A stretch of DNA of 64,000 nucleotides from Euprymna scolopes (taxonomy: Eukaryota), in assembly GCA_053919585.1 (NCBI GenBank), contig CM132790.1; one strand, written 5' to 3'. Shown in pieces: positions 39,056-41,898 of this stretch (its first letter is position 1; each line of letters starts with the position of its first letter). Made by a program: the position numbers and the translations under genes. The notes below the pieces were generated by a model. The model saw only the letters and a list, made by a program, of their open reading frames with translations. It searched no databases and was not told the DNA's origin.

Positions 39056-39270
39056 GTACAGAAAGTTGTTAGTTGAGACAGATCATTGGTACCGTCGGTT
39101 TCAAGCTCGATAATAAGGCCCATTTAAGGTATCCTTATCAAGCTCTCTTCAGCCAATATTCGTCTCTTTTTTCCTTTTAATTGAGCACTCTGCTGGAATT
39201 CTTTTTCCCCCAAAAAACTAATGATATATATATATATATATATAATGATAGTAATTTATAAAATATATAT

Positions 39271-39336
39271 GGCGATTAAGCTACACTGAATATTCTGCGT
39301 TTCATCCAACTATAGGATTCGTCAGGCTTATGCGCC
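39271..39336 (-). ncRNA. Type I hammerhead ribozyme (all stems intact), Penelope/retrozyme-like
   Basis: The minus strand reads GGCG-CA-UAAGC [CUGACGA] AUCC-uauaguu-GGAU [GAAA] CGC-A-GAAUAUUC-A-GU [GUA] GCUUA-AU-CGCC. This gives the complete catalytic core, stems I/II/III and a GUA cleavage triplet. Confidence 0.85.
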
Positions 39337-39338
39337 TA

Positions 39339-39404
39339 GGCGCATAAGCCTGACGAATCCTATAGTTGAGTGAAACGCAGAATATTCAGTGTAGCTTAAT
39401 CGCC
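39339..39404 (+). ncRNA. Type I hammerhead ribozyme, mirror copy with weakened stem II
   Basis: CTGACGA at 39350-39356, GAAA at 39372-39375 and GTA at 39391-39393. Stem I is TAAGC/GCTTA plus GGCG/CGCC. Stem II (ATCC/GAGT) has a C-A mismatch and a U-G pair. Confidence 0.7.
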
Positions 39405-39544
39405 ATATATATTTTATAAATTACTAACTAGCTCTACCTACGTATTGAGCACTTTTGAAGTAAATACTTAAAGTTTACGCATAAATCTATACTTTCGTAT
39501 ATTAAATTTATGTGAATAAATGAAGTAGTTATATATATAATGAT

Positions 39545-39763
39545 ATATATATATCATTAGATATTATTCAAAATGACAATAAAATAAATATATACATATA
39601 TATCATTAGATATTATTCAAAATGACAATAAAATAAATATATATATATATCATTAGATATTATTCAAAATGACAATAAAATAAATATATACATATATATC
39701 ATTAGATATTATTCAAAATGACAATAAAATAAATATATATATATCATTAGATATTATTCAAAA
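39545..39763. repeat. ~47-51 bp minisatellite (ATATATCATTAGATATTATTCAAAATGACAATAAAATAAATAT...), about 4.5 copies
   Basis: Direct tandem copies that differ only in the length of the embedded TA tract. Confidence 0.95.
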
Positions 39764-39799
39764 TTAAGTTTTTCTATGTTTCTACTATTTTAGATGAAA

Positions 39800-40264: not shown

Positions 40265-41898
40265 GTGATGATCATATTTATTGGCACGGTAAAATAAAAG
40301 TTAAATTTTGTCTAATAAATTCTAAAAAAGGGATTAAATTAAAGAAAATAACAAAGTATATTATGTATTTTTAACTGGCCTTTCCGATGCAGCAATCGGA
40401 TTTTAGAAAAAATAAATAACAAAGGAACAACAAACATAATTGCAAAAAACCCTTGTTCAAAATTATTGGCACGATTTATTTAATAATCAATTGTATAGCC
40501 TTTGGCCTTGATTACCTTCCTCAGTCGCTTTTCATAGTTTACAACCAAGTTGTTGCACTCTTCAGTAGTAATTTTAGCCCACTCTTCCTGACAATAATCC
40601 TCCAATTGAATAAGATTCTTAGGCTTCCTTTGCATTACCCTCAATTTTAATGTTCTCCATAAATTTTCAATTGGATTAAGGTCTGGGCTTTGTGATGGCC
40701 ACTCCAAAACATTAATATGATTGTCCTCAAGCCATTTCTTAGTCAGTTTAGCCGAATGCTTTGGGTCATTATCTTGCATGAACCACCAACGACGACCAAG
40801 TGAGAGCTCTTTAGCAGAGTCTTTCAGGTTTTCATCCAATATTTTAACATAATCTTCCTTTTTTATGCTACTTGTGACCTTAACAAGTCGCCCTGGTCCA
40901 GAGGCAGCAAAGGATCCCCAAAACATCAAACTGCCTCCACCGTGCTTCACTGTGGGTATGGTGTTCTTAGGCAGGAAAGCTTCGCCAGATTTTCTGTAAA
41001 TATAAGACACTTTATTATGGCCAAATAACTCTATTTTCGTTTCGTCAGTCCATAGAACACGTCTCCAGAATGCAACATCTTTATCAATATGACGTTTTGC
41101 AAAGGCTAGCCTTGCTTTCAGGTGCATAGGCTTCAATAAGGGAGTCTTTCTCGGACGACATGCTTTTAAACCAGCTCTCTTCAAAACTCTACCAACTGTA
41201 TGTCGAGATACATTCACTCCAGAGGTGGTCTGTTCATCAACAATCTCCCCAACAGAGATCCTTGGGGTTTGTTTTACTTGTCGAACAATTTTCCGTTCAT
41301 CTCTTGGGGAAAGAATCCATTTTCTCCCTCTACCCTCTAAACTCATAACGTGGCCTTGCGATTTGAACTTGTTTATTATGGCTCTAACAGTGGATTTGGG
41401 AAGGTTTAGCTTCTTTGAAATCTTATCATAGCCCTCCCCATTGGTATGGCATGCTACAACAAGCTTCCTGACGTCTTCGCTGTGTTCCTTAGTTTTAACC
41501 ATGGCGATTGAAAATTATAATTTAGTCACTTATAATAGTTTAAATAAATCGCTATCTAAAAATTATCTGAAAAAAATTATTCACTGAATTAGCGTTAAAC
41601 AAGCATAATATAGCTATAAAAAAGTTCAGAAAGCACGTAAACCGGAAATTGATTGATATTATACTGATACTAAAAGAAAAACAAAGCCGTGCCAATAATT
41701 TTGAACAAGGGTTTTTTGCAATTATGTTTGTTGTTCCTTTGTTATTTATTTTTTCTAAAATCCGATTGCTGCATCGGAAAGGCCAGTTAAAAATACATAA
41801 TATACTTTGTTATTTTCTTTAATTTAATCCCTTTTTTAGAATTTATTAGACAAAATTTAACTTTTATTTTACCGTGCCAATAAATATGATCATCCCTG
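40265..41898 (-). mobile_element. Full-length Tc1/mariner DD34E transposon with IR/DR-type long TIRs (~1.64 kb)
   Basis: TIRs at 40265-40473 and 41688-41898 (211 bp) are identical by eye except for 1 base. The element ends ...CCCTG|TA. The direct repeat TTATTGGCACG lies at both ends of each TIR, and the transposase ORF inside is intact. Confidence 0.96.
40480..41502 (-). CDS. Tc1-family transposase, 340 aa, intact
   Basis: N-terminal paired-like HTH region and GRGRK linker. The motifs VLWTDETK, FMQDNDPKH and SPDLNPIENLW give DD34E spacing (34 residues counted). AATAAA overlaps the stop codon. Confidence 0.96.
   Translation of the reverse strand: MVKTKEHSEDVRKLVVACHTNGEGYDKISKKLNLPKSTVRAIINKFKSQGHVMSLEGRGRKWILSPRDERKIVRQVKQTPRISVGEIVDEQTTSGVNVSRHTVGRVLKRAGLKACRPRKTPLLKPMHLKARLAFAKRHIDKDVAFWRRVLWTDETKIELFGHNKVSYIYRKSGEAFLPKNTIPTVKHGGGSLMFWGSFAASGPGRLVKVTSSIKKEDYVKILDENLKDSAKELSLGRRWWFMQDNDPKHSAKLTKKWLEDNHINVLEWPSQSPDLNPIENLWRTLKLRVMQRKPKNLIQLEDYCQEEWAKITTEECNNLVVNYEKRLRKVIKAKGYTIDY

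What the first reader, a model, noticed from the sequence alone, without database searches (positions are those of the whole stretch)
39249..39426. Back-to-back hammerhead ribozymes encoded by a 178-bp palindrome
Seen: a spacer-less palindrome in which each arm, read outward from the centre, contains a full hammerhead core (CUGACGA...GAAA...GUA). Stem I is UAAGC/GCUUA plus GGCG/CGCC around a 2x2 internal loop, stem II has 4 bp, and stem III is capped by self-complementary GAAUAUUC. The only 2 mismatches in the palindrome fall in stem II, which is perfect on the minus-strand copy and weakened on the plus copy. Established: Penelope-like elements and retrozymes carry type I hammerheads in their terminal repeats, often with palindromic stem III that allows dimeric folding, and Penelope insertions often have inverted 5' LTR pieces. 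Inference: transcripts starting near the centre could self-cleave on either strand. Read-through transcripts would instead fold into an ~89-bp hairpin that sequesters the ribozyme and could be a Dicer/ADAR substrate, so the locus could act as a ribozyme/dsRNA switch.
Basis: partly seen in the sequence, partly recalled or inferred. Interest (0 to 1): 0.85.

Follow-up and report, generated by a model that had tools for sequence, protein, structure and literature searches.

The report
Penelope retroelement head-to-head insertion scar
The 178-bp palindrome is real, but it is the joint between two tiny, oppositely oriented end-pieces of a very abundant Penelope-like jumping gene of a mollusc, each carrying that element's hammerhead ribozyme motif; this is a known kind of insertion scar, not a special RNA switch.

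Summary
The arms are 39249-39337 and 39338-39426, 89 nt each, with no spacer and two mismatches (39305/39370, 39306/39369). Each arm has a complete type I hammerhead core. The minus arm folds as a three-way junction; the plus arm has a damaged helix II.

It is not a stand-alone device. The arms are the last ~90 nt (left) and ~196 nt (right) of a Penelope-like retroelement with a TERT-like RT plus GIY-YIG ORF, pLTRs and (TA)n targets. This 5.9-Gb genome holds about 7,500 hammerhead copies, about 29,000 element 3' ends, and 1,430 palindromes with the commonest junction. The whole 285-bp inverted dimer (39249-39533) lies between 10-bp direct repeats in a (TA)n tract, so it was one integration event.

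Published PLE biochemistry explains the shape: both target strands are cleaved and extended, and there are two RT start sites. The arms lack the element's promoter, and read-through RNA would form a -145 kcal/mol hairpin. RNA reads and genomic "fossils" show no sign of cleavage. Rfam misses the motif, but also misses canonical hammerheads in relatives.

The scan noted the same structure earlier elsewhere in this genome. It is a new member of a known kind; the ribozyme/dsRNA switch is unsupported.

The parts
39224..39248 (.). Target (TA)n tract. Its last 10 nt, TATATAATGA (39239-39248), are the left copy of the target-site duplication.
   Evidence: The same 10-mer directly abuts the other end of the insertion.
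39249..39270 (-). Short 3' terminal segment ('short end', ...AAATTACTA) of the inverted (left) element copy.
   Evidence: The 33-nt 3' segment that includes it has 28,949 exact genomic copies.
39271..39337 (-). Hammerhead motif of the left copy, identical to the family's dominant GGAT form except for 2 extra 5' nt. Core CUGACGA is at 39325..39319, GAAA at 39303..39300; predicted cut between 39282 and 39281.
   Evidence: MFE three-way junction, descriptor hit, and GGAT is the dominant form genome-wide.
39336..39339 (.). 4-nt CTAG filler at the centre, between two arms that both begin at unit position 1 (GCGCAU...).
   Evidence: three other loci have TTAG at the same place; this exact junction occurs once in the genome.
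39338..39404 (+). Hammerhead motif of the right copy. Helix II 3' strand is GAGU instead of GGAU (39369 A, 39370 G); predicted cut after 39393.
   Evidence: Most reads of the family show G at 39369 and A at 39370.
39405..39426 (+). Short 3' terminal segment of the right copy; last part of the palindrome.
39427..39533 (+). Extension ('tail') present on the right copy only. In full-length copies this sequence follows the upstream hammerhead and leads to the ORF start (pLTR / 5' UTR).
   Evidence: (97% identity to L038/L041/L043/L044 positions 1245-1438).
39534..39543 (.). Right copy of the 10-bp target-site duplication TATATAATGA, followed by more (TA)n and a 48-bp minisatellite.

Best explanation
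The palindrome is the inner part of a single 285-bp insertion (39249-39533) made by a Penelope-like retroelement (PLE). The insertion consists of two extremely 5'-truncated copies of the element's 3' end, laid down head to head in a (TA)n tract and flanked by a 10-bp target-site duplication. Each copy begins at the first nucleotide of the element's hammerhead motif (plus 2 extra nt) and runs to one of the element's two alternative 3' ends: short on the left, long on the right.

Shown here: (1) the arms are the 3' end / pLTR of an element encoding a TERT-like reverse transcriptase and a GIY-YIG nuclease; (2) head-to-head pairs with variable truncation points are a standard product of this family; (3) the hammerhead's 5' edge is a hotspot for arm starts.

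Inferred, from published PLE biochemistry: the PLE protein nicks both strands of the target, each 3' end primes reverse transcription of element RNA from one of two internal start sites, and the two cDNAs are joined where they end. I also infer that the recurrent arm start reflects a discrete template 5' end, probably a transcription start 31 nt downstream of a TATA box, or else a strong RT stop helped by the GCGC palindrome.

The hammerheads are passengers of this process. In this locus they have no promoter, would be locked in a perfect hairpin in any read-through RNA, and one of them is already mutated. The locus most likely has no function of its own.
For: Palindrome and motif.

Family size: 6,375 exact cores, 7,496 full hammerheads within 3 mismatches, 28,949 exact 3' segments.

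Head-to-head pairs: 1,430 loci carry the commonest junction. Among the first 100 core hits, every close opposite-strand pair was oriented '- then +'. Junction positions vary, with 0-5 nt of filler or a short overlap.

Hotspot: 8 of 28 arms in an unselected sample start at unit positions 1-3 (p ~7e-5, assuming starts are otherwise uniform over 57 positions). Asymmetric cases have one arm at position 1 whatever its partner does.

Link to the autonomous element: L032 has a 646-aa ORF ending 348 nt before a hammerhead and is itself a head-to-head pair whose arms are 98-99.6% identical. Full-length copies run (TA)n - ~230-nt body with TATATAAAAA - hammerhead - short tail - long segment - ATG, with a 763-aa uninterrupted ORF. 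The protein has >2,000 homologues. Its predicted structure (pLDDT 84.5) best matches telomerase TERT (E 6e-9). GIY-YIG scores E 1.6e-4, and all catalytic residues are invariant in the 20-sequence alignment.

Single event: TSD TATATAATGA abuts both ends.

Literature: inverted 5'-truncated copies, one-sided tails, (TA)n targets and hammerheads near 3' ends (PMC8557442); dual hammerheads on opposite strands 100-700 bp apart (PMC4209133); PLE protein cleaves and extends both strands, two RT start sites define the tail, cleavage is dispensable and leaves no RNA-seq ends (PMC11167929).
Against: No Rfam hammerhead model matches, and pair 10.1-11.1 is A-U instead of the conserved G-C, so catalytic competence is unproven. 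The transcription-start idea has no direct support: poly(A) RNA reads show no pile-up of starts at the arm start, and many reads run from the upstream body into the hammerhead. Short-read contigs could not span the palindrome, so this particular locus has no independent read-level confirmation. The 2 extra nucleotides (AG) at arm 5' ends are unexplained. Dual-strand priming has been shown for a lizard PLE in vitro, not for this family.
Confidence: 0.9

Rival explanations
1. Functional ribozyme/dsRNA switch: transcripts starting at the centre self-cleave, while read-through transcripts form a hairpin that feeds Dicer or ADAR.
For: Each arm has a complete hammerhead core. The hairpin is extremely stable (-145 kcal/mol). 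The family is transcribed in both orientations. Two RNA-enriched, strand-biased T>C differences at 39410 and 39425 could be A-to-I editing of the opposite strand.
Against: The arms stop exactly where the promoter-like region begins, so there is no start signal at the centre. The plus arm's helix II is broken. This is one of thousands of similar scars with variable junctions. No read ends fall at the cut site. The T>C sites number only two, sit alongside RNA-enriched C>T and G>T differences, and can equally come from one expressed variant copy.
Confidence: 0.04
2. The palindromic dimer is itself a non-autonomous mobile unit that is copied as a whole, which would explain the 1,430 identical junctions.
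For: The identical 30-nt junction occurs at 1,430 loci.
Against: Junctions form a continuum of truncation points, with fillers and asymmetric arms. One arm often starts at position 1 while its partner starts elsewhere. Longer head-to-head pairs that include ORF sequence have the same architecture. The window's own junction is unique in the genome. A perfect hairpin RNA is a poor RT template (inference).
Confidence: 0.05
3. Assembly or sequencing fold-back artefact.
For: Complex PLE inverted structures are known to trouble assemblies (PMC8557442). I could not get a contig spanning the whole palindrome.
Against: The two sides are not symmetric beyond 89 nt (short versus long end). The flanks are non-palindromic and carry a 10-bp TSD. 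Thousands of analogous loci have different flanks. Independent RNA and DNA runs give some depth across the centre.
Confidence: 0.01
4. Foldback or MITE-type DNA transposon with terminal inverted repeats.
For: It has inverted arms, a TSD, an AT-rich target and high copy number.
Against: The arms are collinear with the 3' end of an RT-encoding element. Truncation is always from the element's 5' side and is variable. Many copies are solo, with one orientation only.
Confidence: 0.01

Closest known systems
Hammerhead ribozymes in the pLTRs of Penelope-like elements (Cervera & De la Pena 2014, PMC4209133)
   Same: It is a type I motif with helix I open, sits in the terminal repeat of a PLE, has a palindromic helix III sequence that permits dimers, occurs in thousands of copies that are mostly in truncated elements, and forms pairs on opposite strands close together.
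   Different: Their metazoan 'min-HHR' has a 1-2 bp helix III, a bulged nucleotide after A9, a 6-8 bp helix II and G10.1-C11.1. Here helix III is 4 bp + A.A + 2 bp with an AUAU loop, so it is stable as a monomer. There is no bulge, helix II is 4 bp, and 10.1-11.1 is A-U. Here the spacing between the two motifs is zero.
Complex tandem/inverted PLE insertions with one-sided 'tails' and microsatellite targets (Arkhipova 2006; Craig et al. 2021, PMC8557442)
   Same: An inverted 5'-truncated copy abuts the 5' end, an extension is present at one end only, the target is (TA)n, and 5' truncation is heavy.
   Different: Both copies here are truncated to the last 89-196 nt, so nothing but ribozyme and tail remains. 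The extension is ~107 nt rather than 30-40 nt. The truncation point is a family-wide hotspot at the hammerhead's 5' edge.
In vitro activities of the Anolis Poseidon PLE protein (PMC11167929)
   Same: Cleavage and extension of both target strands and two alternative RT start sites would generate exactly a head-to-head pair with one short and one long end. Hammerhead cleavage was not needed in vitro, and no RNA-seq read ends fell at the cut site, as seen here.
   Different: It is a different clade and host, and nothing was tested biochemically here.
Animal non-LTR retrozymes (Cervera & De la Pena 2020, PMC7229834; Li et al. 2026 preprint, 10.64898/2026.07.22.740005)
   Same: They are small non-coding hammerhead-bearing repeats derived from PLE pLTRs and mobilised in trans.
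   Different: Retrozymes are head-to-tail tandem arrays that give circular RNAs. This locus and its relatives are head-to-head, and I saw no tandem arrays of the short unit.
Twin-priming inversions of LINE-1 (Ostertag & Kazazian 2001; cited from my own knowledge)
   Same: Two cDNAs primed from the two strands of one target are joined into an inverted structure within a single TSD.
   Different: LINE-1 inversions are inverted/direct segments of one RNA, not mirror-image copies of the same 3' end.

Membership tests
Hammerhead ribozyme, type I | Conserved core C3-U4-G5-A6-N7-G8-A9 ... G12-A13-A14, A15.1-U16.1, and H17 not G | tested here: met
   Both arms have CUGACGA ... GAAA ... U-A; the cleavage-site nucleotide is A.
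Hammerhead ribozyme, type I | Three helices around the core, with helix I open | tested here: met
   The minus arm (which has the family's dominant helix II form) gives helices I (5+3-4 bp), II (4 bp) and III (4+2 bp) as its MFE. The plus arm keeps only 2 of 4 helix II pairs and does not fold this way.
Hammerhead ribozyme, type I | Conserved G10.1-C11.1 pair | tested here: not met
   The pair is A-U here. Relatives' hammerheads have G-C.
Hammerhead ribozyme, type I | Score against the curated covariance models (Rfam hammerhead families) | tested here: not met
   No hammerhead hit even at E<=10 on 73-nt arms. Control: Rfam at E<=1 also reported no hammerhead in the loci L053-L055, where my descriptor finds canonical hammerheads beside homologous PLE genes, so this test has low power here.
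Hammerhead ribozyme, type I | Covariation that preserves the helices | tested here: inconclusive
   The family is too young (most copies exact) and my sample was biased. Across species, hammerheads next to homologous PLE ORFs share the core and helix layout but have unrelated helix sequences.
Hammerhead ribozyme, type I | Self-cleavage at H17 | not testable with these tools
   The indirect tests were negative. Poly(A) RNA reads show no ends at 39393/39394. Only 2 head-to-head junctions fall at the cut site, against 1,430 at the 5' edge. Breaks right after H17 (275) are not in excess over neighbouring positions (122 and 310).
Penelope-like element (EN+) | Reverse transcriptase most similar to telomerase RT | tested here: met
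   An AlphaFold model of the 763-aa ORF (pLDDT 84.5, pTM 0.80) has TERT structures as its top Foldseek hits (3du5_A at E 5.7e-9), followed by other RTs. RT motifs A and C are invariant. Sequence-only searches (Pfam, PDB) found nothing.
Penelope-like element (EN+) | C-terminal GIY-YIG endonuclease behind a Cys-rich linker | tested here: met
   PF01541 scores E 1.6e-4, 22.4 bits against a cutoff of 22.6. Y644, Y660, G662, R671, H675, E730, N745 and four linker Cys are invariant in 20 homologues.
Penelope-like element (EN+) | pLTRs carrying a hammerhead, on both sides of the ORF | tested here: met
   The hammerhead lies ~190 nt upstream of the ATG (L038, L041, L043, L044) and 348 nt downstream of the stop codon (L032).
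Penelope-like element (EN+) | Inverted 5'-truncated copy adjacent, one-sided tail, microsatellite target | tested here: met
   definition from PMC8557442.
Non-LTR retrozyme | Head-to-tail tandem repeats of a short hammerhead unit, giving circular RNA | tested here: not met
   Close pairs are head to head. The only same-strand pair among the first 100 core hits is 2.9 kb apart, with ORF-derived sequence between the two copies. Circular RNA was not tested.
microRNA precursor (Rfam mir-580 and similar) | Score at or above the family gathering threshold | tested here: not met
   60.9 bits against a threshold of 83 for mir-580. These are generic matches of a perfect hairpin to hairpin models.

The most novel reading that the evidence does not exclude
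The 67-nt hammerhead plus a 22-nt tail may be a self-sufficient minimal template for Penelope-type retrotransposition. It would be transcribed from the pLTR's own TATA promoter, so that its 5' end is the first nucleotide of the ribozyme. That would explain the hotspot and the 1,430 identical palindromes. It would also define the cis requirements of PLE integration in fewer than 90 nt, and would seed the genome with thousands of perfect hairpin-forming loci that could feed dsRNA pathways (ADAR, small RNAs).
Probability: 0.2. Interest if true: 0.55.

Novelty: new member of a known kind. Interest (0 to 1): 0.28.

Why it matters
For annotation: such palindromes should be masked as PLE insertion scars and not called as ribozyme genes, miRNA-like hairpins or assembly errors. 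There are thousands in this genome.

For PLE biology: this very young, very large family is a natural data set on how PLE insertions are resolved. It has ~29,000 3' ends, many uninterrupted ORFs, a sharp hotspot of arm starts at the ribozyme's 5' edge, two discrete 3' ends, and clean TSDs. It also gives a negative in vivo 'fossil' result on whether hammerhead-cleaved RNAs serve as templates, in line with the in vitro finding that cleavage is dispensable. The biological role of PLE hammerheads remains open, and this locus does not settle it.

Tried and rejected
1. Rfam at gathering score over the whole window, and at E<=10 on the region and on each arm alone, gave no hammerhead; it gave only sub-threshold miRNA-hairpin look-alikes. 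It also reported no hammerhead in the relatives' loci L053-L055, so I did not count this against the motif.

2. My first BLAST-type sample of 30 copies suggested a hypervariable dinucleotide in helix II. That was a sampling bias from the query; an unbiased pattern search shows GGAT in 96 of 100 copies.

3. The substitution profile by structural element over 74 copies was too biased and the family too young to be informative. The mismatch-tolerant pattern search lists exact copies first, so it gave no variant spectrum.

4. An RNA-only 'opposite strands' joint at 39392/39413, next to the cut site, looked like an RNA-level event. It is encoded by one complex genomic locus, L035.

5. Fossil tests for cleaved templates were both negative: palindromes joined at the cut site (2 loci), and breaks right after H17 compared with neighbouring positions.

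6. Other PLE families of this genome (738-aa and 723-aa ORFs; L048-L051) showed no hammerhead near their ORFs with strict or relaxed descriptors; the one relaxed hit in L050 was not examined. They gave no covariation partners.

7. Pfam on whole ORFs and on 20 homologues, and sequence and profile searches of the PDB, found nothing. Only the isolated C-terminus and the fold comparison were informative.

8. Short-read contigs could not bridge the palindrome, so the read-level artefact check is incomplete.

9. Clade assignment within PLEs (Neptune, Penelope/Poseidon and so on) was not attempted beyond noting the Cys-rich linker.

Full report
**Observation.** The sequence at 39249-39426 is a spacer-less inverted repeat with 89-nt arms that are 98% complementary. 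The only two mismatches are 39305/39370 and 39306/39369. Read outward from the centre, each arm carries a complete type I hammerhead layout: helix I (5 bp, a 2x2 internal loop, then 3-4 bp), CUGACGA, a 4-bp helix II with a 7-nt loop, GAAA, a helix III built around the palindromic GAAUAUUC, and GUA. The minus-arm RNA has the three-way junction as its minimum-free-energy fold. The plus arm does not, because its helix II 3' strand reads GAGU instead of GGAU.

**Is it more than chance?** My own descriptor (full core, helices of at least 5/4/4 bp) hits only the minus arm in the 64-kb window on both strands. It hits 6 of 1000 composition-matched simulated windows. The 31-nt core occurs 6,375 times in the genome, against 0 for the reversed control.

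No Rfam hammerhead model scores the motif, even at E<=10 on a single 73-nt arm. I take this as a weak negative. The same library at E<=1 also reported no hammerhead in L053-L055, where my descriptor finds clean canonical hammerheads next to homologous elements of other animals. One real departure from the family consensus remains: pair 10.1-11.1 is A-U instead of G-C.

**What the arms belong to.** The window lies in a 5.9-Gb genome whose contigs number up to at least C46 and reach ~200 Mb. Public runs that hold parts of the stretch are labelled mollusc or invertebrate. The species name is coded, and I do not name it.

The arm is a high-copy repeat: 7,496 full 65-nt hammerheads within three mismatches and 28,949 exact copies of the 33-nt segment that follows the cut site. 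Aligning copies shows that in most of them the hammerhead is preceded by a conserved body of a few hundred nucleotides and followed by one of two ends. The short end stops at ...AAATTACTA. The long end continues for ~107 nt. Both ends run into (TA)n.

Longer copies connect this 3' region to an ORF. In L032 a 646-aa frame ends 348 nt before the hammerhead. Full-length copies have the order (TA)n, ~230-nt body with TATATAAAAA, 23 nt, hammerhead, short tail, the 'long' segment, ~60 nt, ATG. So the window's right-hand 'tail' is the pLTR / 5'-UTR sequence of the element.

**The ORF.** An uninterrupted 763-aa ORF has more than 2,000 homologues of ~700 aa in marine-invertebrate assemblies. Sequence libraries do not recognise this N/K-rich protein. 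However, its predicted structure (pLDDT 84.5, pTM 0.80) matches telomerase catalytic subunits best (E 5.7e-9), followed by other reverse transcriptases. Its C-terminus scores as GIY-YIG (E 1.6e-4), and every catalytic residue is invariant among 20 homologues. A TERT-like RT, a C-terminal GIY-YIG nuclease, hammerhead-bearing pLTRs and (TA)n targets together define an EN+ Penelope-like element (PMC8557442).

**How the palindrome arose.** Head-to-head pairs are a routine product of this family:

- Among the first 100 core hits, every close opposite-strand pair is oriented '- then +', with offsets from 32 nt to 3.8 kb.
- L032 is such a pair built from 1.2-kb and 2.3-kb truncated copies whose arms are 98-99.6% identical.
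- One particular palindromic junction (arms meeting at GC|GC) occurs at 1,430 loci.
- In 14 unselected tight pairs the arm starts are scattered (unit positions 1-3, 8-18, 28-32, 47, and a few upstream of the hammerhead), with 0-5 nt of filler or a few nt of overlap in most. Even so, 8 of 28 arms start at positions 1-3, the hammerhead's 5' edge (p ~7e-5, assuming starts are otherwise uniform over 57 positions).
- In asymmetric cases one arm starts at position 1 whatever its partner does.

The window's junction is 'both arms at position 1 plus a CTAG filler'. It is unique in the genome; three other loci have TTAG there instead.

The whole inverted dimer, 39249-39533, is bracketed by the direct repeat TATATAATGA inside a (TA)n tract. 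That marks a single integration and argues strongly against an assembly fold-back.

The literature describes this architecture: heavy 5' truncation, an inverted 5'-truncated copy abutting the 5' end, an extension present at only one end, and (TA)n preference (PMC8557442). It also reports dual PLE hammerheads on opposite strands 100-700 bp apart (PMC4209133). The one biochemical study of a PLE protein found that it cleaves and extends both target strands, unlike R2 or LINE-1. It also found that reverse transcription starts at two alternative internal sites, and that the interval between them is the 'tail' (PMC11167929). A head-to-head pair with one short and one long end is what those two properties predict.

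This mechanism is inferred for the present family; it is not shown here. The hotspot at the ribozyme's 5' edge needs an extra assumption. The position lies 31 nt downstream of a TATA box, so it may be the element's transcription start, in which case short pLTR transcripts would be copied to their 5' ends. A strong RT stop aided by the self-complementary GCGC is the alternative. Poly(A) RNA reads gave no pile-up of starts there, and many reads run from the body into the hammerhead, so this point stays open.

**Does the ribozyme act, and does the locus do anything?** The family is transcribed: two raw-read poly(A) runs cover the arms and tail in both orientations. Most reads carry G at 39369 and A at 39370, which confirms that the window's plus arm is the mutated one.

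I found no evidence of cleavage:

- No read ends fall at 39393/39394.
- Only 2 head-to-head junctions lie at the cut site, against 1,430 at the 5' edge.
- Discontinuities right after H17 (275) are not in excess over the positions before (122) and after (310), and they look like ordinary transitions.

These are indirect tests. They agree with the published finding that cleavage is not needed for insertion, and they do not show that the ribozyme is inactive.

For this locus the switch idea fails on anatomy. The arms begin exactly where the promoter-like region ends, so the centre has nothing to start transcription. A read-through RNA would zip into an 87-bp hairpin of -145 kcal/mol, against about -17 kcal/mol for a hammerhead fold.

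Two RNA-enriched, strand-biased T>C differences in the tail (39410, 39425) could hint at editing. They sit alongside RNA-enriched C>T and G>T differences and can equally come from a single expressed variant copy.

**Comparison and novelty.** The motif works like, and sits like, the PLE hammerheads of Cervera and De la Pena. It differs from their metazoan 'min-HHR' in having a long helix III that is stable as a monomer, no bulge after A9, a 4-bp helix II and A10.1-U11.1. Hammerheads beside homologous PLE genes in a sea cucumber, a coral and two unnamed assemblies include both the min-HHR type and the canonical type. All of them have G10.1-C11.1 and unrelated helix sequences.

The locus is not a retrozyme array, because the units are not in head-to-tail tandem. 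It is also neither a foldback transposon nor a miRNA gene. Earlier notes of this scan describe the same kind of palindrome elsewhere in this genome, and two follow-ups reached the same reading. I had formed mine before seeing them.

**Verdict.** The functional interpretation is not supported. It is a new member of a known kind. It is of moderate interest to retroelement specialists for the size, youth and regularity of the family, and of low interest otherwise.

Noticed in passing
window 39556-39770: A 48-bp AT-rich minisatellite (about 5 copies, unit containing ...ATCATTAGATATTATTCAAAATGACAATAAAATAAAT...) lies directly right of the insertion. The pre-insertion target looks like CTAATGA(TA)nTCATTAG, which is itself palindromic.
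   Followed up: partly
window 39060-39210: The left flank of the insertion is itself a very high-copy, transcribed repeat: summed DNA contig depth is 10^5-10^6 and RNA reads are present. Its identity was not determined.
   Followed up: no
window 39410 and 39425: T>C differences appear in 20-26% of RNA reads of one mate orientation (about 10% or none in the other) but in 0.2-0.3% of DNA contig depth. This could be A-to-I editing of the opposite strand or one expressed variant copy.
   Followed up: no
window 39451: 50-58 RNA reads per run match from 39451 onward but are preceded by a constant unrelated sequence (GTCACCCTTACATC..., 95-97% agreement). This suggests a chimeric or spliced transcript, or one expressed locus, that joins into the pLTR/5'-UTR segment.
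   Followed up: no
L035 (G000:C6:149422676-149425708), about 1380-1700: A nested double palindrome of four truncated copies. One sense copy ends exactly at ...CAGTGTA, the predicted cleavage site, before joining an inverted copy. The locus is expressed and accounts for an odd inverted joint in the RNA reads.
   Followed up: partly
family-wide; e.g. L035, and reads at window 39308/39370: A subfamily with a 1-nt deletion in loop 2 (UAUAGU instead of UAUAGUU) makes up roughly 10-33% of DNA contig depth and RNA reads at that position.
   Followed up: no
L001-L004, L071-L073 (arm 5' ends): Arms that start at unit position 1 often carry 2-4 extra nucleotides (AG, TAG, CTAG/TTAG) that are not in the genomic sequence upstream of the hammerhead (which reads ...GAATTC). 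Their origin is unexplained.
   Followed up: partly
L048-L051 (G000:C3:24452500-24458500, C35:4314000-4320000, C16:23894000-23903999, C19:122089000-122095000): Other PLE families of the same genome have 723-738-aa open frames in many copies with identical match scores, so they look very young. They show no hammerhead near their ORFs with my strict or relaxed descriptors; the single relaxed hit (L050 298-335) was not examined. L050 holds a head-to-head pair of full-length copies.
   Followed up: partly
L052:2293-4584 and L032:2438-4378: The ORF has a poly-asparagine, low-complexity stretch of variable length between the RT and the nuclease domain (predicted disordered, pLDDT ~32). This probably explains why Pfam models fail on the whole protein.
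   Followed up: partly
window 40265-41898: Another note of this scan reports an apparently intact Tc1-type DNA transposon about 0.7 kb to the right. I did not examine it.
   Followed up: no
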